Below are positions 1 to 17,579 of a DNA stretch of 64,000 nt, piece after piece. How positions within the stretch are numbered: position 1 is the first letter of the stretch; every line of letters begins with the position of its first letter. Both the position numbers and the translations under genes were made by a program. The notes beneath the pieces were generated by a model. It had not been told where the DNA came from and ran no database searches. It saw only the letters and a list, made by a program, of their open reading frames with translations. The DNA is taken from positions 1 through 64,000 of IMG/VR virus record IMGVR_UViG_3300045972_000138; one strand, written 5' to 3'.

Positions 1-20
1 AAAGCGTTAGTAAACACCGT

Positions 21-96
21 GGGGGTGTAGCTCAGCTGGGAGAGCGGCTGCTTTGCAAGCAGTAGGTAGCGGGTTCGAGTCCTGTCACCTCCACCA
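21..96 (+). tRNA. tRNA-Ala(TGC)
   Basis: Full cloverleaf; anticodon loop TT-TGC-AA; G3:U70 Ala identity pair; encoded CCA. Confidence 0.97.
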
Positions 97-104
97 CAGA
101 ATAT

Positions 105-180
105 TCTCCGATAGCTCAGTTGGTAGAGCAAGTGACTGTTAATCACTAGGTCCGTGGTTCGAGCCCACGTCGGGGAGCCA
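105..180 (+). tRNA. tRNA-Asn(GTT)
   Basis: Acceptor TCTCCGA/TCGGGGA, loop CT-GTT-AA, TTCGA T-loop, G73, CCA. Confidence 0.97.
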
Positions 181-202
181 ATTTTTATAAAGCGTAGTAC
201 AA

Positions 203-418
203 ATGCCGAAAGTCTTAACACCTGTAGAAAAGGCGGAGCAAGATGCAATTCGTGCAGTAAAGAAGGCCGAAGTCTTAGCACGACGCGCCGCAAAGAAAGT
301 AGAAGTTACCAAAGTAAAACAGTTTAAACACCGAATGGAAATAATCCGCACATTATGTGCTATTTTCGCAGTTGTATTAAACCTTTTCGTATTGACACAT
401 ATATTAGGATTTTGGTAA
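203..418 (+). CDS. Hypothetical protein with C-terminal TM helix
   Basis: 71 aa ORF, basic N-terminus, hydrophobic C-terminus; stop overlaps next ATG (TAATG). Confidence 0.7.
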   Translation: MPKVLTPVEKAEQDAIRAVKKAEVLARRAAKKVEVTKVKQFKHRMEIIRTLCAIFAVVLNLFVLTHILGFW

Positions 419-708
419 TGATAGATATTATAAAAGGCATTTATGCATACGCTGTTGCAGACTTCAAAGATAACCCACCTCGATTTACATTAGAAATACT
501 TGCTTGGTTGACTAGTATTATATGCAGTGTTACAATGGCACTTACAATTCCGCATCCACCATTTATGATATTGTATCCAATGTTTATATCGCAATGTTGT
601 GTATTTGGTTGGTCTGCGTGGACAAGAAAAAGTTTTGGTATGGTAGGTAATTATGTGTTATTGGTAAGTATTGATAGCGTTGCACTTACTAGATTATTTT
701 TAGGATAG
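418..708 (+). CDS. Small multi-pass membrane protein
   Basis: Start moved from 355 to the ATG at 418, coupled to the upstream TAA; about 3 hydrophobic segments. Confidence 0.7.
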   Translation: MIDIIKGIYAYAVADFKDNPPRFTLEILAWLTSIICSVTMALTIPHPPFMILYPMFISQCCVFGWSAWTRKSFGMVGNYVLLVSIDSVALTRLFLG

Positions 709-710
709 AT

Positions 711-1070
711 ATGCGAATAACTTACGAAGACGAATACGGTAATATATTGCTTGATCGAGATATGGATTATGTTGCATCTATCGGCGATTCGGTTGTATTG
801 GATGGCGAAGTGTATCGTGTAAAGGCACGTGAATTTGAGCCAGAAGAAAATAAAATTGCCGTCATTGTTACGCAAGGTTCTATAAAACAACCGGTTACAG
901 AAAGTAAAGATGCAGGTAGACACATACAGTTACACAATGCTATAATAGAACTTAATAAACGCCAAGATTTATCAGAAAAGAATCATCGTACATTAACCGA
1001 TAGTCTTAGTTCTATTAAACAAAGCGTAAATAGACAATTCAAAGAAATTAAACAACCTAAGAAAGAATAA
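711..1070 (+). CDS. Hypothetical protein (C-terminal coiled coil)
   Basis: 119 aa ORF tightly packed in operon. Confidence 0.7.
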   Translation: MRITYEDEYGNILLDRDMDYVASIGDSVVLDGEVYRVKAREFEPEENKIAVIVTQGSIKQPVTESKDAGRHIQLHNAIIELNKRQDLSEKNHRTLTDSLSSIKQSVNRQFKEIKQPKKE

Positions 1071-1071
1071 T

Positions 1072-1257
1072 ATGATTAAGCCAGATAAGAATTATAGAAT
1101 GTCTAAGTCTGCAAAGACAAAAATTGCATTGATGTGCAAGAATGCGTCTGAACGCAGTCATCTGAAGTCGTTGCTAATTCAAAGCGAATTGGCAGAAGTT
1201 GCTGCTCGCAAGCAGGCATTGAAGTCTAAAGGTGCCAAGGGTAAAGACGGAGAGTGA
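1072..1257 (+). CDS. Small basic hypothetical protein
   Basis: 61 aa, operon-packed, Lys-rich. Confidence 0.65.
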   Translation: MIKPDKNYRMSKSAKTKIALMCKNASERSHLKSLLIQSELAEVAARKQALKSKGAKGKDGE

Positions 1258-1268
1258 TAAATAAATAA

Positions 1269-1352
1269 CTTGCAATATGTAACCACCAAATTGGTATGCG
1301 CCGATCGTGGACCAGAGTATAGATGTAAATAATCATCCTACCCTATTGCAAG
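1269..1352 (+). ncRNA. Candidate small structured RNA in tRNA cluster
   Basis: Perfect 9-bp terminal stem CTTGCAATA/TATTGCAAG just after GATAAATA (1256-1263); internal hairpins ACCA/TGGT and GATG/CATC; no ORF. Confidence 0.4.
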
Positions 1353-1357
1353 GATTA

Positions 1358-1431
1358 GCCCCCATAAGCTAGTGGTAAACTAAATCATTGGTAATGATTA
1401 ATCCCGAGTTCGATTCTCGGTAGGGGCACCA
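1358..1431 (+). tRNA. tRNA-Thr(GGT)
   Basis: Stem AATCA/TGATT, loop TT-GGT-AA, T arm, CCA; one acceptor mismatch. Confidence 0.93.
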
Positions 1432-1437
1432 GGATAA

Positions 1438-1515
1438 CGCAGGATGGAGCAGTTTGGTAGCTCGCTAGGCTCATAACCTAGAGGTCGTTGGTTCAAATCC
1501 AACTCTCTGCAACCA
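1438..1515 (+). tRNA. tRNA-Met(CAT), probably initiator
   Basis: Loop CT-CAT-AA; C1:A72 mismatch and GGAGCAG..TGGTAGCTC D arm typical of fMet; acceptor stem slightly irregular. Confidence 0.88.
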
Positions 1516-1568
1516 GTATCTCGCCGAGGAAGATGTCGGTCACCTAATATGTGTGTAACTATTAAAAT

Positions 1569-1645
1569 GCCCTGGTGATGAAATTGGTAAACATAGCGGT
1601 CTAAGAAGCCGTAAGCTGCGAGTTCGAGTCTCGCTCAGGGCACCA
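1569..1645 (+). tRNA. tRNA-Leu(AAG), short variable loop
   Basis: Acceptor GCCCTGG/TCAGGGC, loop CT-AAG-AA, Leu-type D loop and A73, 5-nt variable loop, CCA. Confidence 0.85.
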
Positions 1646-5448: not shown

Positions 5449-5631
5449 ATGGCGACAGGTAATGCAGGAATGCTTACACCGTACGAGCAAGGCGTTGATC
5501 ACGCCCGCAGCGGATATGACTGGCAGCAAATTTATGATCAACCCGGAGAAGAAATTGAAGCCCAGGATTATAGAAATGGATATTTTAGAACAGTAGAACA
5601 GTTACTTAAAACTGGTAAGGAAATAAAATGA
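5449..5631 (+). CDS. Hypothetical protein
   Basis: 60 aa, coupled to both neighbours. Confidence 0.6.
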   Translation: MATGNAGMLTPYEQGVDHARSGYDWQQIYDQPGEEIEAQDYRNGYFRTVEQLLKTGKEIK

Positions 5632-6674
5632 GAAAATTAGCAACAATTAGAAAAATTAGCGATATACTTCCTATCGAAGGTGCTGACCTTATTGTACGGG
5701 TTAAAGTCGACGATTGGTATTGCGTTGCGTTGAAGACAGAATTCAATGTTGGCGACTTGTGCGTCTATTTTGAAATTGATAGCTTCATCCCTATTATCCC
5801 ACAAGTGGAACACCTTCGCGCCCGTGCATACAAGAAAATGGGCGACAAAGAAGGTATCCGTATTAAGACTATTAAACTGAAGGGTCAGATTAGCCAAGGT
5901 CTTGCATTACCGGTGTCTGTTTTAACAATGATAGAATCTGAGTTATTTGAGGGACTAGATGTATCATTCCCACTAGGTGTAGAAAAGTACGAACAACCTA
6001 TTCCGCAAGAACTTAATGGCCAAGTAAAAGGCAACTTCCCTACATTCATTAAAAAGACTGATCAGGAACGTTGCCAAAATATTGGTTACCAAATCTTTAC
6101 CGAAAATAAGGATGCCACATACGAAGTTACAATGAAGCTCGATGGTACTTCGTATACTGGTTTTCAAAATAACGGCGAAGATGGTGTATGCGGTCGTAAC
6201 TGGCAATTACAGCTCGACGAATGGAATGCAAGTAATGCACTTGTAAGAATGTTCATTGATAGCAAAATGCAATCCGCATTGCAAGCATACGGTAAGAACA
6301 TTGCTGTGCAAGGCGAATTTATGGGTCCAAAAATCCAAGCAAATCGCGAAGGTTTAACTACCTACACATTGTTTGTATTTGATATCTATGATATTGATAA
6401 TCAGTGTCAACTTAGCCCGGATAATCGTAGAGTTGCATTGCAGGCCTTATACGACCTTGGTATGAACAAAGATATGGTTCAGCACGTTCCTATTTTAGCA
6501 TATAATGTGACACTTGCAGATTTAGGTATATCAGATGTAGCTGGATTATTGAAAGCTGCAGAAGGACCTAGTATCAACCATGTAATTCGCGAAGGCGAAG
6601 TCTACAAGCGCATGGATGGCCTGTTTAGCTTTAAGGCTATTTCTAACGCATTCTTGCTGAAAGAAAAAGACTGA
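5628..6674 (+). CDS. ATP-dependent RNA ligase, DRB0094-like family
   Basis: N-terminal MRKLATIRKI..EGAD..GDLCVYFEIDS module; motif I KLDGTS, QGE, FVFDI, EGEV, FKAISN. Confidence 0.9.
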   Translation: MRKLATIRKISDILPIEGADLIVRVKVDDWYCVALKTEFNVGDLCVYFEIDSFIPIIPQVEHLRARAYKKMGDKEGIRIKTIKLKGQISQGLALPVSVLTMIESELFEGLDVSFPLGVEKYEQPIPQELNGQVKGNFPTFIKKTDQERCQNIGYQIFTENKDATYEVTMKLDGTSYTGFQNNGEDGVCGRNWQLQLDEWNASNALVRMFIDSKMQSALQAYGKNIAVQGEFMGPKIQANREGLTTYTLFVFDIYDIDNQCQLSPDNRRVALQALYDLGMNKDMVQHVPILAYNVTLADLGISDVAGLLKAAEGPSINHVIREGEVYKRMDGLFSFKAISNAFLLKEKD

Positions 6675-6799: not shown

Positions 6800-7489
6800 A
6801 TGCGGTTACAAGAACTCTTCGAGTCCTCCGAAGAAGACAGAGCATTAATTTCTCTGTCTTCCGCCATTTACTCTACTATCAAAACACACGATGGCGATCT
6901 TGGTACAATCGGCGATTTATACGATACATCTATTCCGGTATTAAACAATGTAAGCATATCGGTTAAAAGCGGTAACGAATTTTTAGAATATGCTACCGGC
7001 GCCAATAATATACAAGATCACAGTGGCAAGAAAGTTTATTCTGTATGGGATGCTGACACAAATTCTATTGTATTCAACAAAGACCTAATGCACGAGGATA
7101 GAATGAAAACTTCTGTAACTCACGAATTACGCCACGCATTAGATGAGATTAAATCGGGATCATATAAAGGCGGTGGCCTTGGTTATTTCACGCCAAAGAA
7201 AAAAGAACACAGGGACGACGAGACAACAAAATATAGGGCACAACCTGCGGAAATAAATGCACGATTTTCTGAGATCTTACATAAGCTAACTGATATTATT
7301 CCTAAACGTAAACAAGCGGTAGAACCTGCTGAACTTAAGAATAGGCTTATGCATGACCTCAACCATTTATTGGTCAAATATGAGATTGCAGATTTATTTC
7401 CAGAAAAGACGCAATCACGCGATTATAAGCGATTAATCAACCGAGCCTATGATTTTATAAACAAAGAAACAGCTATGTTGGGTTTATAA
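6800..7489 (+). CDS. Putative head-packaged protein with HExxH zincin-like motif
   Basis: N-terminal MRLQELFE; THELRHALDE; EINARF. Confidence 0.7.
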   Translation: MRLQELFESSEEDRALISLSSAIYSTIKTHDGDLGTIGDLYDTSIPVLNNVSISVKSGNEFLEYATGANNIQDHSGKKVYSVWDADTNSIVFNKDLMHEDRMKTSVTHELRHALDEIKSGSYKGGGLGYFTPKKKEHRDDETTKYRAQPAEINARFSEILHKLTDIIPKRKQAVEPAELKNRLMHDLNHLLVKYEIADLFPEKTQSRDYKRLINRAYDFINKETAMLGL

Positions 7490-7549: not shown

Positions 7550-8020
7550 GTGGCAGAAGAAAATAAAGAGTTTAGTGATTCAGAGATTCGTGAGATGAGA
7601 GAAGCTCGCGAGGCTCGTGAAGCTCGCGAAGCAAGAAGTTTTGGTCGTCGTGCAGCCGATCTCGACGATATGGTAAGCACTAAGACTCGCGTGGCCGTTT
7701 TAGAAAAAATTGCAGAGAATCACGAAAACCGAATTAGTGATATGGAAGATTTTCATAGGTCTGTTGTTGAACGTCTTGACCAAAAAATACAAATGGATGC
7801 TACAAACCAAATCATCATTGAGCGCACATTGACAAAGGCTGTAACATCAATCGATACGTTATCTGAAAATCTTAAGGCTGCTGTGAAAAGTGCAAGCAAG
7901 GCAGAAGAGCTTGCATCAAAGCACGAAACAATTGGGGCGACCGTTATTAAATTAAGCGGATGGATTTTTGTTGCAATTGGCGGCATATGGGCAATAGTTA
8001 AATTTTTCTTAGGTGTGTGA
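7550..8020 (+). CDS. Coiled-coil protein with C-terminal TM helix
   Basis: GTG start at 7550; short REAREAREAR repeat; hydrophobic C-terminus. Confidence 0.65.
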   Translation: MAEENKEFSDSEIREMREAREAREAREARSFGRRAADLDDMVSTKTRVAVLEKIAENHENRISDMEDFHRSVVERLDQKIQMDATNQIIIERTLTKAVTSIDTLSENLKAAVKSASKAEELASKHETIGATVIKLSGWIFVAIGGIWAIVKFFLGV

Positions 8021-8448
8021 TGCTTATACAACTACTTTACATATCTAAACACAATGGTACTACTATTAATAATTTAGATAATTTTATGGCCGCTAATAGG
8101 ACACGAAATAAAGCTAACAATCTAACAAGCATATTGCTTTCTACAGACAAGTATTATTTACATTTGCTCGAAGGTACCCGCATTAGTGTGAATGCACTTT
8201 ACAACAGAATAAGCAGAGATGAGAAGCATTACGACTGCACAATACTTCGCTACATAGAAATAAAATCACGCGAGTTTGACCAATGGAGTGCCGAGCACGT
8301 TAGCATGAATGACTTTATATCCGACGGGTTTAACCTTTTATTCCCTAGGGGCGAAATACACATAGATACGCTTTCTGCTACTCAAGCAGTAACAATTATA
8401 CGAAGAATCCATGCACATTTGCTTGTAAAAGCAGAAATCTCAAGATAA
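8017..8448 (+). CDS. BLUF-domain protein (degenerate flavin site)
   Basis: QLLYIS, RNKANNLTSILL, YLHLLEG, LYNRISRDEKH, REFDQWSA align to the BLUF consensus; Gln->His and Met->Ala. Confidence 0.85.
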   Translation: MMLIQLLYISKHNGTTINNLDNFMAANRTRNKANNLTSILLSTDKYYLHLLEGTRISVNALYNRISRDEKHYDCTILRYIEIKSREFDQWSAEHVSMNDFISDGFNLLFPRGEIHIDTLSATQAVTIIRRIHAHLLVKAEISR

Positions 8449-8487
8449 TAGCGGTTTTAACCCTATTTTAGACACCTTTTTTTCCGG

Positions 8488-8517
8488 TTGACATAAATAC
8501 ATCTATAGTTATATACT
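8488..8517 (+). promoter_or_regulatory. sigma70-type promoter for ncRNA unit 0
   Basis: TTGACA-18 bp-TATACT; +1 near 8524, just before the unit stem at 8528. Confidence 0.7.
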
Positions 8518-8527
8518 ATGTTTATCG

Positions 8528-8753
8528 AGAGTGGGTTCAGCAAACCAAATTATGCCGCAAGGCACTATGGCTAGTTGGGACTTGTGTTTATAAGCAGGAG
8601 CCGAAAGGTGTTGATAGCGTCACTAAACATGCGAAAGCAAACAATCCTAACAAACTACACGGGCAGTAGTTAACACGTCCAAAACGGTGGTAAGGCCCCG
8701 TAGTAATATTATATACCCGCAAGGATTATAATATTATCCCTTACACCACTCTG
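8528..8753 (+). ncRNA. Array unit 0 (226 nt structured RNA)
   Basis: AGAGTGG-GT-TCAGCAA ... CCACTCT-G; four GNRA-capped hairpins and a potential pseudoknot. Confidence 0.75.
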
Positions 8754-8759
8754 TTTTAT

Positions 8760-8788
8760 TTGACAATGTATTGCTTTTGCAATATAAT
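8760..8788 (+). promoter_or_regulatory. Consensus sigma70 promoter for units 1-3
   Basis: TTGACA-17 bp-TATAAT; +1 near 8795. Confidence 0.9.
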
Positions 8789-8802
8789 ACGTAAGAGGTT
8801 AA

Positions 8803-8951
8803 AGGATAGGTTCTGCAACAATCATTAACAATGATCTGATGTAAACTGCGTTAATAAATTCGAAAGGATTTATAAACTAACTGAAAAAGTAAGCGGTTAT
8901 ATCGCCTAGGATTTGTAGCCCTGGTTAAAATAGCTGCTAAAAACTATCCTG
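8803..8951 (+). ncRNA. Array unit 1 (149 nt)
   Basis: AGGATAG-GT-TCTGCAA ... CTATCCT-G; internal GAAA-capped hairpin 8854-8873. Confidence 0.72.
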
Positions 8952-8963
8952 TTTTGAATTTGA

Positions 8964-9059
8964 AGATTAGGTACAGCAAAAAATTAAATTAGCAATATTA
9001 GAGCTTGCTCTAAGATCCTTTCTGGAGGGGAAAGCAAAAACTCGCCAAAACCTAATCTG
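8964..9059 (+). ncRNA. Array unit 2 (96 nt)
   Basis: AGATTAG-GT-ACAGCAA ... CTAATCT-G (stem extends to 9 bp); G-CUUG-C hairpin 8998-9013. Confidence 0.72.
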
Positions 9060-9070
9060 TACTTTATAAG

Positions 9071-9308
9071 TGGATGATTTCAGCATACTTAATACAGCTA
9101 ATGCTATAGAATGCGGCCGGTAGGCTTTATGTAATAGAAATATTACACGTAGACATAATAGATAGACTCGGAGAATCCGAGATATGCATCCGACAGCAGA
9201 CACAAGAATCGGATAGGTAACGTGAACGTTGATAGGGTTGTGAAACTTGAACCAGCATACAGGGGATAGGGCAACCAGAATAATAAAATACCAGTTTCGA
9301 TCATCCTG
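9071..9308 (+). ncRNA. Array unit 3 (238 nt)
   Basis: TGGATGA-TT-TCAGCAT ... TCATCCT-G; hairpins 9130-9147 (GAAA), 9167-9181, 9188-9214. Confidence 0.68.
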
Positions 9309-9330
9309 TTTTATTCTTATGCTTAGAGAA

Positions 9331-9609
9331 ATGAAAATTCGACGTCCTGTTCTTACAGAAGAGGAACAACAAGAAATTCGCAAAAAGTGGCTCGAAGAGC
9401 TTAACGAAAGTAGGATAGGTACAAGTCCTGTAAGGGATTTAGACCACCTAATATATCTGATTGAAGAAAATGCAGGCGCAATACACGATGTAATGCAGGA
9501 TAAAGATGTCAACGGACATTATTCTCCATCGTTGCAGGCATCATTCGACGATACAATGGACATACTAGATTATTTGAGGAAGTTACGTAATCCAGTAGAC
9601 ACACAGTAA
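9331..9609 (+). CDS. Hypothetical protein inside the array
   Basis: The track's start at 9247 lies within unit 3; ATG 9331 (or 9319) gives a hydrophilic ~92-aa protein. Confidence 0.6.
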   Translation: MKIRRPVLTEEEQQEIRKKWLEELNESRIGTSPVRDLDHLIYLIEENAGAIHDVMQDKDVNGHYSPSLQASFDDTMDILDYLRKLRNPVDTQ

Positions 9610-9641
9610 AAAGTAACTTACAATTGACACTTGCTTAATAA

Positions 9642-9675
9642 AGATTTATAACAGCAAATTTTTAAATTAAATCTG
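9642..9675 (+). promoter_or_regulatory. Minimal array unit 4 / putative translational operator of the DUF2828 gene
   Basis: AGATTTA-TA-ACAGCAA-ATTTTTAAAT-TAAATCT-G followed directly by AAAGG SD and ATG 9689; overlaps a TTGACA-17-TATAAC match (9624-9652). Confidence 0.6.
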
Positions 9676-9688
9676 AAAGGAAAACAAA

Positions 9689-11116
9689 ATGACAACATTA
9701 TTTACAGCAGTAAACGCATCGGCTACAACAGCTAACGGTGCAGTAACAAACGCTTCTTCGTTAAACAAGAACGTTGACCTTTTCTTCTTGGCAGGCGCAA
9801 GCCGTAACAAGGATATTACACCTACTTTCGCTGGTGCGTTGGTAGAAGACTCGGAAGTAGCAGTTCGTGTATTACAGTGGGCGCGTGACGCTCGTGGTGG
9901 TGCAGGTGAACGTGACACATTCCGTAAGTTGTTTGGCTATTTGGTTCGTACTGAACCCGCAATGGCTACTCGTGTATTGGCAAATGTGCCAGAGATTGGT
10001 CGTTGGGATGACTTGTTCATTGCTTTCGGATCTACTTTGGAACGCGATGCTTTGCGTATGATCGCTTCTGCGTTGAAGGACGCGAAGAATGGTTTGTGCG
10101 CTAAGTGGATGCCACGTCAGGGTAAGGAAGCCGGTAAGATCCGTGCTTACATGCAGCTTACACCTAAGCAGTACCGTAAGTTACTGGTAGGTCTGTCCAA
10201 CACTGTTGAACAGAAGATGTGTGCTAACGACTGGACAGGAATTGTGTACCCACACGTTCCATCGGTTGCGGCAGGTCGTTACCAGAAGGCTTTTAAGAAG
10301 CACGATGCGGTAGGTTACGAAGCGTACAAGACAAAGTTGGTTGCTGGTGAAACAAAGATCAATGCATCGGTTGCTTTCCCTTACGATGTGATTCGTTCTA
10401 TGCGTAATGGTGATGAAGTTGTGTCCAATGAACAGTGGAAGGCATTGCCTAACTACTTGGAAGGATCCAATGAAAACATCATGCCGTTGGTTGACGTTTC
10501 GGGTTCTATGGATGGCGTAAGTGTTTCCGGTAGCGTAACTGCTCTGGACGTTGCGATCTCCCTTGGTTTGTATGTTTCCGAACGTGCAGGCGGTGTGTTT
10601 AAGGATCAGTTCATCACATTCTCTGGTTCGCCAGAAATGTTGAAGGTATCTGGTTCGTTGAAGCAACGTTACGACCAAATGGAACGTTCGAACTGGGCAG
10701 GTAACACCAACGTGCAGGCAGCTTTTGAGTTAATTCTTAAGGCGGCTGTAACACATAAGGTGCCAGAGGCAGAAATGCCTACTAAGTTGCTGATCCTTTC
10801 GGATATGGAATTTGACTCCTGCGTAACAGTAGGCGGAACTTCTACAAACCGTTGGGGTGGTGGTGCACAGGTATCCGTAAGTGCAATGGATATGATCCGT
10901 GACAAGTTTGCTAACGCAGGTTACAAGCTTCCACAAATCGTGTTCTGGAACTTGAACGGTCGTGCTGGCAACAGCCCTGTTACATACAACGAAGCTGGTA
11001 CTGCGTTGGTATCTGGATTCAGCCCAAGCATTGTTAAGTCAGTGTTAGGTGGTGAAGAATTGACACCAATCAGCATTATGCTTAAGACCGTAATGGTACA
11101 GCGTTACGACTTCTAA
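9689..11116 (+). CDS. DUF2828-family TROVE(Ro60)-like protein with C-terminal vWA domain
   Basis: WARDARGGAGER, GRWDDL, AKWMPR helical region; MIDAS DVSGSM, NTNVQAAF, ILSDMEFD, IVFWNL, LVSGFS. Confidence 0.88.
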   Translation: MTTLFTAVNASATTANGAVTNASSLNKNVDLFFLAGASRNKDITPTFAGALVEDSEVAVRVLQWARDARGGAGERDTFRKLFGYLVRTEPAMATRVLANVPEIGRWDDLFIAFGSTLERDALRMIASALKDAKNGLCAKWMPRQGKEAGKIRAYMQLTPKQYRKLLVGLSNTVEQKMCANDWTGIVYPHVPSVAAGRYQKAFKKHDAVGYEAYKTKLVAGETKINASVAFPYDVIRSMRNGDEVVSNEQWKALPNYLEGSNENIMPLVDVSGSMDGVSVSGSVTALDVAISLGLYVSERAGGVFKDQFITFSGSPEMLKVSGSLKQRYDQMERSNWAGNTNVQAAFELILKAAVTHKVPEAEMPTKLLILSDMEFDSCVTVGGTSTNRWGGGAQVSVSAMDMIRDKFANAGYKLPQIVFWNLNGRAGNSPVTYNEAGTALVSGFSPSIVKSVLGGEELTPISIMLKTVMVQRYDF

Positions 11117-11131
11117 GGAAGTATAGCGATA

Positions 11132-11156
11132 AAATAGGGGCGTATGCCCCTATTTT
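11132..11156 (+). terminator. Intrinsic terminator after the DUF2828 gene
   Basis: AAATAGGGG-CGTATG-CCCCTATTT followed by T. Confidence 0.75.
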
Positions 11157-11258
11157 GCTAAATAAGTATACGCTCCGGGTTTGTTTATCCCGAGGAGTAC
11201 ACGGCTATTGAATGGGGTTAAATTCTCAGGAGACGAGGGAGCCTAACATAAACAGTAT

Positions 11259-11332
11259 GCGGGATTAGTTTAATGGTAAAACGGAACCTTGCCAAGGTTC
11301 ATACAGGAGTTCGATTCTCCTATCCCGCTCCA
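11259..11332 (+). tRNA. tRNA-Gly(GCC)
   Basis: GCGGGAT/ATCCCGC, loop TT-GCC-AA, U73, CCA. Confidence 0.97.
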
Positions 11333-11355
11333 AATTTTACTGGAGATATCTTATT

Positions 11356-12003
11356 ATGATTACACATCTTGTTCCTGTATGCTTTTTAGGTGGGTCTGGC
11401 GGCAACTTTCTATCTACATGGATTGCACAGGCTGATGATTCTTCTACTCCGTTAACTGAATTTAGTAAACACGGTAATGCTCACCTTTACAAGAGTAGGC
11501 CTGCTAAGTATTTATTTAATATGTTTTCCGATCAATCTGCTGCTATAGAAAGCCTTAAGTTATATGATAGCGAATTGACTAAACGAACCTTTTCCGATTG
11601 TCACTTAGTTAACGACGCGCAGATATTAGAAAACTTTAATACTTGCATTAAAGTATATTTTGACGTCGACGATATTCCAGATATCGCATATTCGTTTGTT
11701 GGCAAATATTGTATTGACGAAGCAGGTGGCGCAGAAGATTCTGTTACTCTTACTAAGCAGTTTCAAGATCGTTTACTTGTTATAAACGATAAATTTCCTG
11801 GGTTCACTAAACCATTGCCTTCACAGGAAGGGACGCTATCGGTATCCTGGAAAGAGTTAGTGTACCTAGACGCTAATGCGTTAGTTGCTAAGTTATCAAC
11901 ATTCTTATCAATTGACACAGTGAAATTTGATGTTGCTGCTTTATTGAAATGGCGAGAGATTACACTTGCTAGTATTATATCACTTAAATCCGTAATTGTT
12001 TAA
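11356..12003 (+). CDS. Hypothetical protein (GGSGGNFL motif) inserted at the tRNA-Gly 3' end
   Basis: 215 aa with SD GGAG; flanked by a 27-bp direct repeat. Confidence 0.75.
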   Translation: MITHLVPVCFLGGSGGNFLSTWIAQADDSSTPLTEFSKHGNAHLYKSRPAKYLFNMFSDQSAAIESLKLYDSELTKRTFSDCHLVNDAQILENFNTCIKVYFDVDDIPDIAYSFVGKYCIDEAGGAEDSVTLTKQFQDRLLVINDKFPGFTKPLPSQEGTLSVSWKELVYLDANALVAKLSTFLSIDTVKFDVAALLKWREITLASIISLKSVIV

Positions 12004-12851: not shown

Positions 12852-12934
12852 GCTGAAGTCGCATAGCGGCTATTGCAACGCTCTTGTAAGGCGTCGGGAA
12901 ACCACCGTGAGTTCGAGTCTCACCTTCAGCACCA
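12852..12934 (+). tRNA. tRNA-Thr(TGT) with long variable arm
   Basis: GCTGAAG/CTTCAGC, loop CT-TGT-AA, 12-nt variable region with GG-GAAA-CC, CCA. Confidence 0.88.
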
Positions 12935-12938
12935 TATA

Positions 12939-13358
12939 ATGAATAAAGTCTATAACTGCTTATTTTGTAATAAAGAAAATGCGTATGACTTGCACCATAA
13001 AACAAATAAATATTGTGATGCAAAATGCCAATCTGATTTTCAGAACTTGCAAAGACTAAATAATTGGAAAGCAACCGGAAATACTGCCAGGGTTGCCGGT
13101 ACACCTGGGTGGTTAAAGAAATATATTTTAGAAAAGCAGAACGGTAAATGTACTGAATGCGGAATAAGTGAATGGAATAGCAAACCTATTGTATTTGATT
13201 TAGAGCATAAAGATGGTGATAGTAGTAACAATTTAGAAGAAAACTTGTGTTGTATGTGCCCAAATTGTCATAGTCAGACATCGACTTATAAGGGCAAGAA
13301 TAAAGGTAATGGCAGGCATAGTCGTCGAGAACGATATGCTGCCGGTAAAAGTTTTTAA
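12939..13358 (+). CDS. Free-standing HNH (homing-type) endonuclease
   Basis: Start moved to ATG 12939 (the track's start lies inside the tRNA); CLFC..YCDAKC, CTECG, EHKDG..NN..NL..CPNCHSQT. Confidence 0.9.
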   Translation: MNKVYNCLFCNKENAYDLHHKTNKYCDAKCQSDFQNLQRLNNWKATGNTARVAGTPGWLKKYILEKQNGKCTECGISEWNSKPIVFDLEHKDGDSSNNLEENLCCMCPNCHSQTSTYKGKNKGNGRHSRRERYAAGKSF

Positions 13359-13359
13359 T

Positions 13360-13433
13360 GCGGGGTTCGTATAGTGGTAATACCTTAGCCTTCCAAGCTA
13401 AAGCGAGGAGTTCGATTCTCCTACCCCGCTCCA
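13360..13433 (+). tRNA. tRNA-Gly(TCC)
   Basis: GCGGGGT/ACCCCGC, loop CT-TCC-AA, CCA. Confidence 0.97.
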
Positions 13434-13535
13434 TCTAATCAAAAACTAGAATAAAAAGCCGCATAGTAAGGGCTAGAGATAAATATTGCAGTGCAATAAA
13501 ATACTACTGCACAATTAACTACCCCCGGAAATTAT

Positions 13536-13784
13536 ATGCAAAAAGAAAAAGATAATGTTAAAGCTTTGGCTAAAGAAAACGACCATAAAGAAAAAGAATA
13601 TAAGACATTCGATGATTATTCAAAGAAAGATATAGAAGGTACAACTTCACATATTGGTTTTGAAAAAACAGAATACGAACATTTTACATCACCAGTACCA
13701 GAACCAACTTCTGTTGCAATGTTCATTGCTGGTATTGCGCTATTTGCGACCATCATTAAAGTACGTACTAATAAAAATAGATAA
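13536..13784 (+). CDS. PEP-CTERM sorting-signal protein
   Basis: C-terminal SPVPEPTSVAMFIAGIALFATIIKVRTNKNR = VPEP + TM + basic tail; no N-terminal signal peptide. Confidence 0.85.
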   Translation: MQKEKDNVKALAKENDHKEKEYKTFDDYSKKDIEGTTSHIGFEKTEYEHFTSPVPEPTSVAMFIAGIALFATIIKVRTNKNR

Positions 13785-13793
13785 ATAACATAT

Positions 13794-13885
13794 GCGAGCG
13801 AGACTTGGCAGTCAGGGAGAGCTTATACCTCTCTTAGCCCCAGATTAGGGTTCTCGAGAGAGTTCGATCCTCTCCGCTCGTACCA
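13794..13885 (+). tRNA. tRNA-Ile(TAT) with long variable arm
   Basis: GCGAGCG/CGCTCGT, GAGAG-CTTATAC-CTCTC anticodon arm, ~20-nt variable arm, 3-bp D stem, CCA. Confidence 0.85.
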
Positions 13886-13890
13886 AATTA

Positions 13891-13982
13891 GGAAACTTGG
13901 CAGAGTCCGGTTTATTGCAACAGTCTTGAAAACTGTCGGGGTTTAAAAGCCCCCGTGAGTTCGAATCTCACAGTTTCCGCCA
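13891..13982 (+). tRNA. tRNA-Ser(TGA)
   Basis: GGAAACT/AGTTTCC, loop CT-TGA-AA, long variable arm, G73, CCA. Confidence 0.96.
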
Positions 13983-17115: not shown

Positions 17116-17189
17116 GCTGGTTTAGTATAGTGGTATTATGCTGCCCTCGTAACGCAGTGACATTGGTTCAATTCCAATAACCAGCACCA
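17116..17189 (+). tRNA. tRNA-Thr(CGT)
   Basis: GCTGGTT/AACCAGC, loop CT-CGT-AA, CCA; one anticodon-stem mismatch. Confidence 0.9.
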
Positions 17190-17192
17190 CCG

Positions 17193-17267
17193 GTCCCTAT
17201 AGTTCAACGGATAGAATGTGAGATTCCGAATCTCATGATACAGGTTCGATTCCTGTTAGGGGCACCA
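17193..17267 (+). tRNA. tRNA-Arg(CCG)
   Basis: TGAGA-TTCCGAA-TCTCA, A20 in D loop, CCA. Confidence 0.93.
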
Positions 17268-17286
17268 ATCTCAACAAGAAGGCTTA

Positions 17287-17493
17287 ATGGCATCGTATTA
17301 TAAAGAAGGTAGCAAGATTCAATTCGAAGGCTACAAAGGTGAAGTTACAAAGATAACAGAAACCTATAGAAAAAATGTGTTAGTGGTCAAGGTAACATCG
17401 TTTCCCAGAACCAAAGGTATAAATAGTTCATCATCGTTAGGGTTATTTGAATACCCGGACGGTAAATTAGAATTTATGGCATTCATAGATTGA
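17287..17493 (+). CDS. Hypothetical protein
   Basis: 68 aa with SD GAAGG. Confidence 0.6.
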   Translation: MASYYKEGSKIQFEGYKGEVTKITETYRKNVLVVKVTSFPRTKGINSSSSLGLFEYPDGKLEFMAFID

Positions 17494-17504
17494 TAAATAT
17501 AAAA

Positions 17505-17579
17505 CTCGGCATAGTTCAATGGATAGAACGGGGCACTCCTAACGCTCAAGTGTAAGTTCGATTCTTACTGTCGGGACCA
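17505..17579 (+). tRNA. tRNA-Arg(CCT)
   Basis: Loop CT-CCT-AA, A20, T arm, CCA; several G:U pairs and one mismatch. Confidence 0.88.

What the first reader, a model, noticed from the sequence alone, without database searches (positions are those of the whole stretch)
8488..11156. Array of five non-coding RNA units sharing a terminal stem + WCWGCA motif, upstream of a Ro60/TROVE-like (DUF2828-vWA) gene: candidate multi-cargo RNP system
Seen in the sequence: five segments of 226, 149, 96, 238 and 34 nt have unrelated interiors but the same frame, 7-nt arm + 2 nt + WCWGCAW ... complementary 7-nt arm + G. U0 is AGAGTGG-GT-TCAGCAA...CCACTCT-G (8528-8753). U1 is AGGATAG-GT-TCTGCAA...CTATCCT-G (8803-8951). 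U2 is AGATTAG-GT-ACAGCAA...CTAATCT-G (8964-9059). U3 is TGGATGA-TT-TCAGCAT...TCATCCT-G (9071-9308, 6 bp). U4 is AGATTTA-TA-ACAGCAA...TAAATCT-G (9642-9675). The stems differ in sequence but keep pairing, which amounts to covariation within one genome. U0, U1 and U3 are followed by TTTT. Two sigma70 promoters start just before U0 and U1, and U1-U2-U3 are only 11-12 nt apart, like a processed polycistron. Established: Ro60/Rsr (TROVE + vWA) binds the terminal stem of Y RNAs, whose other domain tethers effectors such as PNPase, and in bacteria it is often linked to RNA repair. Inference: the DUF2828 protein recognises the stem + CAGCA handle and loads several different RNAs as adaptors, decoys or tRNA mimics; a 7-bp stem plus one unpaired base resembles an acceptor stem. 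I know of no description of this motif.
Basis: partly seen in the sequence, partly recalled or inferred. Interest (0 to 1): 0.93.

Follow-up and report, generated by a model that had tools for sequence, protein, structure and literature searches.

The report
RNA partners of phage Ro-like protein
A jumbo phage carries a row of small structured RNAs that all wear the same short "handle", next to a gene for a Ro60-like ring protein; the same pairing recurs in hundreds of phages, so it looks like an undescribed branch of the Ro/Y-RNA system, and its handle also resembles the enigmatic Class I RNAs of Dictyostelium.

Summary
All five units lie at the stated coordinates. U3 has a 6-bp stem, and U4 is a 34-nt hairpin in the 5' UTR of the downstream gene. 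The gene product (Pfam DUF2828 + DUF7788/vWA) models as a Ro60-like ring: the top six PDB fold matches are all Ro60.

The frame is a 7-bp terminal stem, N-U, WCAGCAA, a variable interior, an A-rich stretch, the 3' arm and a final G. A covariance model built only from other phages finds U2 and U4 and nothing else significant in the 64-kb window. It gives 69 hits in viral loci and 46 hits in independent genome loci. Every hit is on the gene strand and next to a DUF2828 gene, down to about 31-35% protein identity. This includes cultured Felix O1-like, Listeria A511, Campylobacter, Staphylococcus and mycobacterial phages.

Relatives attach the handle to tRNA-like modules in both circular permutations, as in YrlA. 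In all 19 loci of the close clade the last handle ends 10-16 nt before the start codon, which suggests autoregulation.

No Rfam family reaches threshold. The handle repeatedly gives sub-threshold, full-length matches to Dictyostelium Class I RNA (RF01414).

Best reading: these are cognate Y-RNA-like partners of a Ro60-like phage protein, with a different handle. Binding is inferred, not shown.

The parts
5628..6674 (+). RNA ligase gene (context). It is syntenic with the RNA array in most close relatives.
   Evidence: PHROG 968 'RNA ligase' at E 2.6e-83. Pfam RNA_ligase PF09414 plus the PHA02142 OB domain. Homologs lie upstream of the array in at least 15 related loci.
6800..7489 (+). ORF229, a conserved HExxH protein of unknown function (context). 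It lies between the ligase and the RNA array.
   Evidence: H108-E109-x-x-H112 is invariant in 14 homologs. Pfam hits to metallopeptidase families are only weak. The model has pLDDT 81 but no significant PDB fold match.
8488..8517 (+). Sigma-70-type promoter-like site in front of U0
   Evidence: TTGACA-18-TATACT, 11 of 12 matches.
8528..8753 (+). U0: a 226-nt structured RNA with the handle (7-bp P1, GU, UCAGCAA), followed by UUUU
   Evidence: Sequence. The fold forms P1. A family of 12 homologs has hairpins with compensatory changes, and a conserved loop GGUAAGGC is complementary to CCCUUACA just 5' of the 3' arm.
8760..8788 (+). Consensus sigma-70-type promoter-like site in front of U1
   Evidence: TTGACA-17-TATAAT, 12 of 12 matches.
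8803..8951 (+). U1: a 149-nt structured RNA with the handle (GU, UCUGCAA), followed by UUUU
   Evidence: Sequence. The fold has z = -4.6 and P1 forms. L021 and L006 have the same arms but a different interior.
8964..9059 (+). U2: a 96-nt RNA with the handle (GU, ACAGCAA). P1 is extended by an 8th covarying pair, and the 3' block is highly conserved.
   Evidence: Model R1, built from other phages, scores it 29.6 bits, E 9e-6 over the whole window. In the family of 11, pair 8 is G-C in 6 and U-G in 5. The 3' half is 92-97% identical across phages whose proteins are about 75-80% identical.
9071..9308 (+). U3: a 238-nt structured RNA with a weaker handle (6-bp P1, UU, UCAGCAU), followed by UUUU
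   Evidence: Sequence and fold. The homolog at L021 3160-3396 has the same arms, compensatory changes in inner hairpins and an invariant loop ACAGCAGACACAAGAA.
9331..9609 (+). Small ORF (92 aa) between U3 and U4. It is probably a real gene of unknown function and is not a constant part of the system.
   Evidence: It has no Pfam, PHROG or NCBIfam hit. Its only homolog is in L021, at 35% identity.
9596..9624 (+). Weaker promoter-like site in front of the DUF2828 mRNA
   Evidence: TAGACA-17-TACAAT, 10 of 12 matches.
9642..9675 (+). U4: a 34-nt minimal handle hairpin in the 5' UTR of the DUF2828 gene. The SD (AAGGA, 9677-9681) starts 2 nt after its terminal G. It is the proposed translational operator.
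   Evidence: R1 scores it 26.1 bits, E 1e-4. All 19 close-clade loci show the same arrangement, with ...UCUG, then the SD, then the ATG 10-16 nt on. The hairpin alone is thermodynamically weak.
9689..11116 (+). Gene for a Ro60-like ring protein of 475 aa (DUF2828 helical-repeat part plus DUF7788/vWA with a MIDAS motif)
   Evidence: Pfam DUF7788 at 2.9e-49 and DUF2828 at 1.7e-25. PHROG 850 'RNA-binding protein' at 2e-153. D269-x-S271-x-S273, T340 and D372 are invariant. The AF2 model has pLDDT 80 and pTM 0.77. The Foldseek top six are all Ro60 (2nvo, 9l5y, 2i91, 1yvp, 1yvr), E 3e-8 to 1e-5.
11123..11147 (+). Terminator-like G+C-rich hairpin with a U run after the gene. tRNA-Gly follows at 11259-11332.
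   Evidence: Read directly from the sequence. It was not listed by the simple scan.

Best explanation
The array encodes the cognate non-coding RNAs of a phage Ro60-like protein. It is a Y-RNA-like ribonucleoprotein system that uses its own handle.

Each RNA pairs its 5' and 3' ends into a short stem (consensus A-G-G-N-U-N-N). The stem is followed on the 5' strand by an unpaired N-U-W-C-A-G-C-A-A, and on the 3' strand it is preceded by an A-rich stretch and ends in C-U-G. I propose that the ring protein (DUF2828 helical repeats + vWA) binds this stem-plus-CAGCAA handle, as Ro60 binds the terminal stem of Y RNAs. The variable interior of each RNA would be a module that brings something else to the protein. 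In many relatives that module is a tRNA mimic. In this phage there are four other structured modules whose partners are unknown.

U0 and U1 have strong promoters of their own. U1-U2-U3 are probably cut out of one transcript. A minimal copy of the handle (U4) sits in the protein's own mRNA directly against the Shine-Dalgarno sequence. Excess free protein would therefore repress its own translation, and the free RNAs would titrate it.

The conserved neighbourhood (RNA ligase, tRNA genes; RtcB in Listeria phage A511) points to RNA repair, quality control or tRNA-directed conflict with the host as the field of action.

What is shown:
- the RNAs and the handle are real and conserved;
- the handle is strictly linked, by strand and position, to this protein family;
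- the protein has a Ro60-like fold;
- relatives carry tRNA-like modules;
- the last handle lies next to the SD.

What is inferred:
- physical binding;
- autoregulation;
- adaptor function;
- the biological process.
For: 1. Protein. Pfam gives DUF2828 + DUF7788/vWA. The MIDAS residues are invariant. The full-length fold matches only Ro60 proteins at E <= 1e-5.

2. Specificity of the RNA frame.
- Model R1, trained on other phages, finds only U2 and U4 in 64 kb on both strands.
- It gives 69 hits in 67 viral loci and 46 hits in 68 independent genome loci. All are on the gene strand and beside the gene.
- Strict frames number 144 on the + strand against 16 on the - strand.
- Their density is 0.64/kb near the gene against 0.04/kb elsewhere.
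- The whole 87-kb genome of E. coli phage AYO145A has only 3 hits with E < 0.01, all within 1 kb downstream of the gene.

3. Depth of the association. Units lie next to DUF2828 genes of Listeria A511, Campylobacter F368, Staphylococcus S-CoN_Ph4 and Mycobacterium phage Jubie, at 31-40% identity. DUF2828 is the only constant neighbour.

4. The stem covaries while C11, G13, C14, A15 and the 3' G are invariant.

5. The architecture is Y-RNA-like. The handle encloses a T-arm, an acceptor hairpin and a D-arm in Felix-like, S13, Jubie and close relatives. In S13 the same handle, capped and circularly permuted, replaces the anticodon arm of two tRNA-shaped RNAs.

6. Operator. The last handle ends 10-16 nt before the ATG in 19 of 19 close-clade loci, and 15-34 nt before it in the Clostridia-associated clade, A511 and Campylobacter. 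In Vibrio phage D525 the stem appears to enclose the SD and the AUG.

7. Context. There is an RNA ligase upstream, RtcB near the A511 gene, and tRNA arrays nearby.

8. [quoted passage not shown] This fits a need for RNA partners or feedback.
Against: - No binding, expression or end-mapping data exist for any of these RNAs. Everything rests on co-occurrence and analogy.
- By sequence the protein is not TROVE. There is no Pfam TROVE hit at E <= 0.01, and the PDB profile search gives only E 0.04 to the phage Ro60 vWA.
- The canonical Ro-binding motif of bacterial Y RNAs (GNCGAAN0-1G; PMC4201824) is absent from the handle. The analogy cannot be carried over residue by residue.
- The window's long units (U0, U1, U3) are out of reach of the covariance model and rest on the regex frame plus homologs.
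- Pairing percentages in alignments selected for pairing are partly circular.
- The U4 hairpin is thermodynamically marginal on its own.
- A few loci show only variant frames, with a 6-bp stem or a longer spacer.
- The window's cargo modules have no recognisable partner, so 'adaptor' is a guess for them.
Confidence: 0.75

Rival explanations
1. The frame is a processing and stability cassette. It would be recognised by a host or phage RNase, or by end-protecting factors, and would mark RNAs to be cut out of polycistronic tRNA-type transcripts. Its nearness to DUF2828 would only reflect a shared 'RNA island'.
For: - Units are packed 0-12 nt apart like tRNA precursors.
- In Felix-like phages they lie between tRNA genes.
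- The flanks are A-rich on the 5' side and U-rich on the 3' side.
- A terminal stem plus an unpaired base plus a U tract resembles RNase Z/ELAC1-type substrates (bioRxiv 10.64898/2026.10.07.757187).
Against: - Other tRNA clusters in the window (1-1645, 12852-13982, 17116-17579) carry no units.
- The whole Felix-like genome has units only beside the gene.
- Units occur next to DUF2828 genes that have no tRNA array, as in Staphylococcus phage and Jubie.
- A processing signal does not explain the conserved copy set against the SD of the DUF2828 mRNA.
- Processing and protein binding are not exclusive.
Confidence: 0.1
2. The handle is bound by some other conserved factor, such as the RNA ligase, a host RNA chaperone or an RRM-type protein. 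The DUF2828 protein would act in the same pathway without touching the handle.
For: - An RNA ligase is syntenic in the close clade.
- In Dictyostelium the only proven direct binder of a Class I RNA is the RRM protein Rnp1A (PMC7919456).
Against: - The ligase and ORF229 are absent from the neighbourhood in Felix-like, Campylobacter, Staphylococcus and mycobacterial phages, while the handle persists.
- Hosts span five phyla, so a single host factor is unlikely.
- The Ro60-like fold has a precedent for binding terminal stems.
Confidence: 0.1
3. The units are purely cis-acting leader or attenuator elements of the DUF2828 operon, not stable trans-acting RNAs.
For: - The arrays lie upstream of the gene in the close clade.
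- The last unit abuts the SD.
- U runs follow several units.
Against: - In the clade at about 50% identity, and in Felix-like, Staphylococcus and Jubie phages, the units lie downstream of the gene.
- U0 and U1 have their own near-consensus promoters.
- The interiors are large, conserved, independently folding RNAs, including tRNA mimics.
Confidence: 0.04
4. The frames are chance inverted repeats in A+T-rich intergenic DNA, or DNA-level repeats.
For: - Perfect 7-nt arms around a WCWGCA word do occur by chance: 8 other such frames in the window.
Against: - The frames are clustered and limited to one strand, and shuffles give far fewer.
- An independent covariance model detects them.
- The stems contain G-U pairs and compensatory changes.
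- The frame is conserved across phyla of hosts.
Confidence: 0.01

Closest known systems
Ro60 (Rsr) with Y RNAs, especially bacterial and phage YrlA-type Y RNAs (Chen et al. 2014, PMC4201824; Thermus phage phiLo Ro60-Yrl1/2, PMC12135203)
   Same: - A ring protein of helical repeats plus a vWA/MIDAS domain.
- Several different ncRNAs encoded within about 1 kb on the same strand.
- The 5' and 3' ends pair into the presumed protein-binding stem.
- The other end is a variable module, and in many members it is a tRNA mimic with a T-arm, a capped acceptor stem and a D-arm.
- Linkage to RNA ligase / RtcB and tRNA genes.
   Different: - The protein belongs to Pfam DUF2828/DUF7788, not TROVE, and is recognisable as Ro60-like only by fold.
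- The handle is stem + N-U-WCAGCAA ... CUG, not the GNCGAAN0-1G / bulged-helix motif.
- No Rfam Y RNA model matches.
- Arrays hold up to four or five cargos.
- One handle copy sits in the protein's own 5' UTR.
- In phage S13 the handle is also grafted, circularly permuted, into tRNA-shaped RNAs.
Dictyostelium Class I RNAs (Rfam RF01414; Kjellin et al. 2021, PMC7919456)
   Same: [quoted passage not shown]
- There is a conserved G-C closing pair.
- The unpaired motif next to the 5' arm ends in UUACAGCAA. The Rfam consensus is GaUcuC-CUUACAGCAA ... GagAuC-UG.
- The interior is A/U-rich and variable.
- The 3' end is CUG(U).
- The length is about 55-60 nt in many phage units.
- Genes are clustered, with many different copies.
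- Full-length model matches fall exactly on the phage units.
   Different: - Phage units score 24.9-29.5 bits, below the gathering score of 41.5. The window's own U2 and U4 do not appear even at E <= 10.
- The phage stem has one extra A-U pair, and the spacer is 1 nt shorter.
- Phage units can carry interiors of 100-350 nt.
- Class I RNAs are eukaryotic, driven by DUSE promoters, reported as unique to Dictyostelia, and bound by the RRM protein Rnp1A.
- No link to a DUF2828 protein is known or could be tested here.
Autogenous translational operators that mimic the protein's main RNA ligand (ribosomal-protein leaders, phage coat-protein and RegA-type operators; from general knowledge)
   Same: A minimal copy of the RNA ligand is placed on or next to the SD or AUG of the protein's own mRNA. 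This is conserved in all close relatives.
   Different: Repression has not been tested. The operator hairpin is very A+U-rich and weak without protein.
Other TROVE-module RNPs (vault/TEP1 with vault RNA; from general knowledge)
   Same: A helical-repeat ring plus vWA protein is paired with small RNAs whose ends form a stem.
   Different: There is no sequence or genomic relation. They are eukaryotic particles.

Membership tests
Ro60/TROVE protein family | Match to the TROVE domain model (Pfam PF05731) | tested here: not met
   Pfam lists only DUF7788, DUF2828 and weak VWA_2 at E <= 0.01, for the window protein and for five cultured-phage homologs. The PDB profile search reaches phage Ro60 only at E 0.04, over the vWA start.
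Ro60/TROVE protein family | Fold: a ring of helical repeats closed by a vWA domain | tested here: met
   AF2 model with pLDDT 80 and pTM 0.77. The Foldseek top six are all Ro60 structures, with full-length alignments, E 3e-8 to 1e-5 and TM 0.45-0.59. The next hits are isolated vWA domains at E > 4e-3.
Ro60/TROVE protein family | vWA domain with a MIDAS motif (DxSxS ... T ... D) | tested here: met
   D269, S271, S273, T340 and D372 are invariant in 31 homologs.
Y RNA / YrlA | Encoded within a few kb of the ring-protein gene, on the same strand | tested here: met
   All 69 + 46 model hits lie on the gene strand and beside the gene. The whole-genome check agrees.
Y RNA / YrlA | 5' and 3' ends pair into a terminal stem | tested here: met
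   Stems, folds, covariation. The real RNA ends are not mapped.
Y RNA / YrlA | Conserved Ro-binding motif in the stem region (GNCGAAN0-1G; GGUCCGA in animals) | tested here: not met
   The only GNCGAA in the units is a GAAA tetraloop hairpin inside U0, at 8600. The conserved element is N-U-WCAGCAA.
Y RNA / YrlA | At least one RNA per locus with a tRNA-like domain | tested here: not met
   None is found in the window. It is met in relatives: L003, L005, L021, Felix-like, S13 and Jubie.
Y RNA / YrlA | Match to a curated Rfam Y RNA model | tested here: not met
   No Y RNA family appears at E <= 10 in window 8300-11400, or at E <= 1 in seven related loci.
Y RNA / YrlA | Bound and stabilised by the ring protein | not testable with these tools
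   This needs RIP/CLIP, EMSA, or RNA levels in a gene deletion.
Dictyostelium Class I RNA (RF01414) | Score at or above the Rfam gathering score (41.5 bits) | tested here: not met
   The window gives no hit at E <= 10. Relatives give 24.9-29.5 bits with full-length alignments at 7 of 8 loci that hold short UU-ACAGCAA units.
Dictyostelium Class I RNA (RF01414) | A short terminal stem with a conserved G-C closing pair, and an 11-nt motif ending in ACAGCAA next to the 5' arm | tested here: inconclusive
   The consensus is A-G-G-N-U-N-N / N-U / W-C-A-G-C-A-A ... C-C-U-G. Four of the five universally conserved Dictyostelium positions (C6, C9, A10, A11; PMC7919456) coincide with phage invariants. 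The spacer differs by 1 nt, and the window units read GU-/UA-ACAGCAA.
Dictyostelium Class I RNA (RF01414) | Length 42-65 nt; DUSE promoter; dictyostelid genome | tested here: not met
   The window units are 34-238 nt, are phage-encoded and have sigma-70-type promoters. Many relatives are 53-63 nt.

The most novel reading that the evidence does not exclude
The stem + UUACAGCAA ... CUG handle may be the recognition element of an ancient RNP shared by phages and eukaryotes. DUF2828-vWA proteins are also found in eukaryotes (my recollection of the Pfam family's distribution and of five plant and animal papers; not tested here). They would be the missing partners of the Dictyostelium Class I RNAs, which have been considered unique to dictyostelids and are of unknown mechanism. 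On this reading the phage RNAs and the Class I RNAs are one RNA class.
Probability: 0.3. Interest if true: 0.92.

Novelty: new variant of a known kind. Interest (0 to 1): 0.85.

Why it matters
DUF2828/'RNA-binding protein' genes occur in at least 710 cultured phage genomes. These include Felix O1-like coliphages and Salmonella phages, Listeria A511-type phages, Campylobacter, Staphylococcus, Enterococcus and mycobacterial phages, and jumbo phages. Thousands more occur in metagenomes. No RNA partner or function has been reported for them in the literature I could search.

The finding supplies four things:
- a sharply defined RNA handle that predicts those partners genome-wide;
- many tractable model systems, such as E. 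coli K-12 phages and M. smegmatis phages;
- a natural series of 'cargo' modules, including tRNA mimics in two topologies;
- a ready-made autoregulation hypothesis.

It would extend the Ro60/Y-RNA principle (one ring protein, several adaptor RNAs) to a second protein family with a different code. It would also correct mis-annotated small ORFs and odd 'tRNAs' in phage genomes.

The resemblance to Dictyostelium Class I RNAs turns a long-standing question, what those RNAs bind and do, into a directly testable one.

Tried and rejected
- Rfam at gathering score on the window, and at E <= 10 on 8300-11400, gave nothing but tRNAs.
- A tRNA-acceptor reading of the stem was rejected. In tRNA-like relatives the handle takes the anticodon-stem position.
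- I looked for a tRNA-like unit in the window by blastn with relatives' units and by a T-loop/D-loop pattern. None was found; the hits were tandem tRNA genes.
- I looked for a circularly permuted, capped handle elsewhere. It is real only in S13-type phages; otherwise there are 26 hits on the + strand against 29 on the - strand, which is noise.
- The minus-strand 181-aa ORF across U2/U3 was rejected as a gene. The region is conserved as RNA, with stem covariation and a nearly invariant 3' block.
- Internal AGCAA repeats are enriched (15 against 1.3 expected), but mostly within one related subfamily. I kept this only as a remark.
- A sequence search of the PDB with the protein and with its profile was uninformative.
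- For ORF229, the fold search gave no significant match.
- Literature:
  - 'DUF2828' returns five unrelated plant and animal papers.
  - 'UCP015417' returns two.
  - Avesson 2011 and Aspegren 2004 are not held.
  - The supplements of Chen 2014 are not held. I therefore could not check whether any of their 22 phages carry a DUF2828-type 'Ro'.
  - A Felixounavirus transcriptome search was useless.
- I could not test whether Dictyostelia encode DUF2828, because no eukaryotic collection is available here.
- The covariance model cannot span interiors longer than about 110 nt. U0, U1 and U3 therefore rest on the regex frame plus homolog alignments.

Full report
**1. What is in the window**

The window is part of a 237.6-kb IMG/VR jumbo-phage contig. 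It has 13 tRNA genes.

Between a BLUF-domain gene that ends at 8448 and a small ORF that starts at 9331 lies about 880 nt without a plausible coding frame.
- U0 (8528-8753), U1 (8803-8951) and U2 (8964-9059) have perfect 7-bp arms.
- U3 (9071-9308) has 6 bp; its first pair is T.T.
- U4 (9642-9675) is a 34-nt hairpin.

Each unit has two bases and then WCWGCA after the 5' arm, and a G after the 3' arm. U0, U1 and U3 are followed by TTTT. The gaps U1-U2 and U2-U3 are 12 and 11 nt. Near-consensus sigma-70-type promoter sites (11/12 and 12/12 matches) precede U0 and U1. In the minimum-free-energy folds of U0-U3 the terminal stem forms every time, and U1 folds far better than shuffles (z = -4.6).

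**2. Is it more than chance?**

Perfect 7-nt arms around a WCWGCA word do occur by chance: there are eight other cases in the window. The full frame is a different matter.
- Frame tested: second spacer base T, G after the 3' arm, at most one G-U pair.
- Shuffles give 1.2 per strand per 64 kb.
- Three of the four + strand hits lie within 530 nt here.

The stronger test uses other genomes. I collected 80 viral loci that encode relatives of the downstream protein. I then built a covariance model (R1) from 21 short units of phages other than this one.
- In the window, R1 finds U2 (29.6 bits, E 9e-6) and U4 (26.1 bits, E 1e-4), and nothing else below E = 1 on either strand.
- In 67 viral loci it gives 69 hits at E < 0.1.
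- In 68 further loci from bacterial and archaeal genome assemblies, none used for training and with 34-52% protein identity, it gives 46 hits.
- All 115 hits are on the strand of the gene and lie just upstream or downstream of it.
- The regex frame occurs 144 times on the gene strand and 16 times on the other strand.
- Its density is 0.64/kb within 1.5 kb upstream or 1 kb downstream of the gene, against 0.04/kb elsewhere.

**3. The protein**

The ORF 9689-11116 matches Pfam DUF7788 (E 2.9e-49) and DUF2828 (E 1.7e-25), and PHROG 850 'RNA-binding protein'. It does not match TROVE.

An AlphaFold2 model built from 31 homologs has pLDDT 80 and pTM 0.77. Its six best PDB matches are all Ro60:
- D. 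radiodurans Rsr;
- Thermus phage phiLo Ro60;
- Xenopus Ro60, with and without RNA.

These alignments are full length, with E 3e-8 to 1e-5. Everything below them is an isolated vWA domain. The MIDAS residues DxSxS...T...D are invariant. Membership in the TROVE sequence family is not met.

**4. The handle**

Forty-three model-aligned units from very different phages give this consensus:
- 5' arm: A-G-G-N-U-N-N;
- spacer: N-U;
- motif: W-C-A-G-C-A-A;
- variable interior;
- A-rich stretch;
- 3' arm: N-N-A-N-C-C-U;
- final G.

C11, G13, C14, A15 and the final G are invariant. U9, A12 and A16 are nearly so. All seven stem pairs change on both sides in some sequences, while 98% of cells stay paired. 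These alignments were selected for pairing, so the percentage paired is partly circular. The independent evidence is the strand and position specificity described above.

**5. How far the association reaches**

tblastn finds the protein family in 710 cultured phage records. I examined five more of them.

| Phage | Units | Position relative to the gene |
|---|---|---|
| E. coli Felixounavirus AYO145A | four | among the tRNA genes just downstream |
| Listeria A511 | three | tandem, upstream; an RtcB ligase lies 1.3 kb downstream |
| Campylobacter F368 | two | upstream |
| Staphylococcus S-CoN_Ph4 | three | downstream |
| Mycobacterium phage Jubie | three | downstream |

All five proteins are DUF2828 + DUF7788. 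A search of the complete 87-kb AYO145A genome gives only three hits with E < 0.01, all within 1 kb of the gene. Across these phages the DUF2828 gene is the only constant neighbour of the units. The RNA ligase and the HExxH protein ORF229 are syntenic only in the close clade.

**6. What the interiors are**

- U0 belongs to a family of 12 alignable RNAs of 207-268 nt. They have GNRA-capped hairpins, compensatory changes, and a conserved hairpin loop GGUAAGGC that is complementary to CCCUUACA just before the 3' arm.
- U2 belongs to a family of 11. It has an 8th covarying pair, a variable hairpin, and a 3' block that is 92-97% identical in phages whose proteins are only about 75-80% identical.
- U3 has a homolog in the closest relative, with the same arms, compensatory changes and an invariant loop.
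- U1's relatives keep the frame but have a different interior.
- None of these modules matches an Rfam family, and none is tRNA-like.

Relatives add a revealing module. Units of about 115-130 nt in L003, L005, L021, the Felix-like phage, S13 and Jubie enclose a T-arm, a capped acceptor-like hairpin and a D-arm. This is the architecture of YrlA-type bacterial Y RNAs (PMC4201824).

In Cronobacter phage S13, two further RNAs have the ordinary tRNA topology: acceptor stem with CCA, D-arm and T-arm. Their anticodon arm is replaced by the same handle, capped by a GAYA loop and therefore circularly permuted. Both topologies give the same object: a tRNA-shaped body joined to the handle. This is strong, independent support for the handle being a functional module in its own right. 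It also shows that the handle stem corresponds to the anticodon stem, not the acceptor stem.

**7. The copy in the mRNA**

U4 ends 13 nt before the ATG, and the Shine-Dalgarno sequence starts 2 nt after its last G. In all 19 loci of the close clade the last handle ends 10-16 nt before the start codon, whether it is a 33-45-nt mini-hairpin or a full tRNA-like unit. Its ending reads ...UCUG, followed directly by AGGA or GGAG.

Other clades show similar spacing:
- the Clostridia-associated clade, 15-30 nt;
- Listeria A511, 34 nt;
- the Campylobacter phage, 20 nt.

In Vibrio phage D525 the presumed stem encloses the SD, and its 3' arm contains the AUG; this model hit is weak. The hairpin is too weak to matter on its own. 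That fits an operator that needs the protein. I therefore read U4 as an autoregulatory site. This is an inference.

**8. Comparison with what is known**

*Ro60/Y-RNA system.* The system works like Ro60 with Y RNAs. It has a ring protein, several adjacent same-strand RNAs whose ends form the presumed binding stem, tRNA mimicry, and linkage to RNA ligases. Phage Ro60-Y RNA pairs are themselves known (PMC4201824; PMC12135203; PMC7824862). It is not a member by the defining sequence features:
- there is no TROVE match;
- there is no GNCGAAN0-1G motif;
- there is no Rfam Y RNA hit.

*Dictyostelium Class I RNAs.* The unexpected resemblance is to these RNAs. Rfam RF01414 aligns over its full length, exactly on the short phage units, in 7 of 8 loci tested. 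Scores are 24.9-29.5 bits against a gathering score of 41.5. E is 0.17-2.7 per search of about 60 kb against all families, and 9e-4 in a 301-nt search.

The Rfam consensus is GaUcuC-CUUACAGCAA ... GagAuC-UG. The published description (PMC7919456) lists these features:
- 42-65 nt;
- a stem joining the ends, with compensatory changes;
- an invariant 5' G paired to the C of the 3' CUGU;
- an 11-nt motif;
- clustered genes.

All of these match the phage frame point by point, apart from a 1-nt shift in the spacer. Those authors found no Class I RNAs outside Dictyostelia.

The phage units are related to one another, so the repeated hits are not independent. The window's own units do not hit RF01414 at all. 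I regard the link as a serious lead (about 0.3), not a result. I could not test whether dictyostelids have a DUF2828 protein.

**9. Verdict**

The most likely account is a Ro60-like phage RNP in which one protein recognises a stem + CAGCAA handle carried by several different RNAs and by its own mRNA.

Confidence by claim:
- the RNA class and its linkage to the protein family: about 0.95;
- direct binding: about 0.75;
- autoregulation: about 0.5;
- a role in RNA repair, quality control or tRNA-centred conflict: about 0.4.

One published observation fits a need for feedback or partners. [quoted passage not shown] I verified the DUF2828 identity only for the similarly annotated Jubie protein.

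I found no description of this RNA-protein pairing in the searchable literature. The supplementary phage list of Chen et al. 2014 could not be checked.

Noticed in passing
window 8017-8448 (+): A BLUF (blue-light FAD sensor) domain protein is encoded by the phage directly upstream of the RNA array (Pfam PF04940, E 6e-22). A 58%-identical homolog sits at the same place in L021.
   Followed up: partly
L007 1652-3687: The DUF2828 gene match spans 2036 nt instead of about 1425. This suggests an insertion of about 600 nt (intron, intein or homing endonuclease) in the gene.
   Followed up: no
L049 7722-8213: A phage-encoded tmRNA (Rfam 87 bits) lies 2.3 kb downstream of a DUF2828 gene and its handle units.
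   Followed up: no
L053 5937-5991; L027 5923-5982: There is a near-threshold match to the cyanobacterial sRNA NsiR1 (38.6 bits against a gathering score of 39) directly after the long handle unit. It may simply be the operon terminator.
   Followed up: no
window 8975, 8991, 9033 (U2); 9081, 9194, 9253 (U3); short units of L036, L037, L047, L057, L079: Extra internal copies of AGCAA/CAGCA occur inside units: 15 against 1.3 expected in 21 short units, mostly from one related subfamily. In U3 one copy sits in an invariant hairpin loop. They could be additional binding sites.
   Followed up: partly
L081 5705-5962 (minus-strand CDS gp131); L155 3977-4066 and 4196-4324; L082 5179-5421: Small annotated 'hypothetical protein' CDSs, and oddly long 'tRNA-Ser / tRNA-OTHER' features in cultured phage records, overlap the handle RNAs. 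They are probably mis-annotations.
   Followed up: partly
window 6800-7489 (+): ORF229 has an invariant HExxH motif and is always found between the RNA ligase and the RNA array in the close clade. A confident model (pLDDT 81) has no significant PDB match.
   Followed up: yes
window 13794-13885: ARAGORN calls a 92-nt tRNA-Ile(tat) that Rfam's tRNA model does not report at gathering score.
   Followed up: no
L083 3443-3484 (Vibrio phage D525): The 5' UTR carries AGACATT-AT-ACAGCAA right after a -10 box. The complementary arm overlaps the start codon, so the SD and AUG would lie inside the handle.
   Followed up: partly
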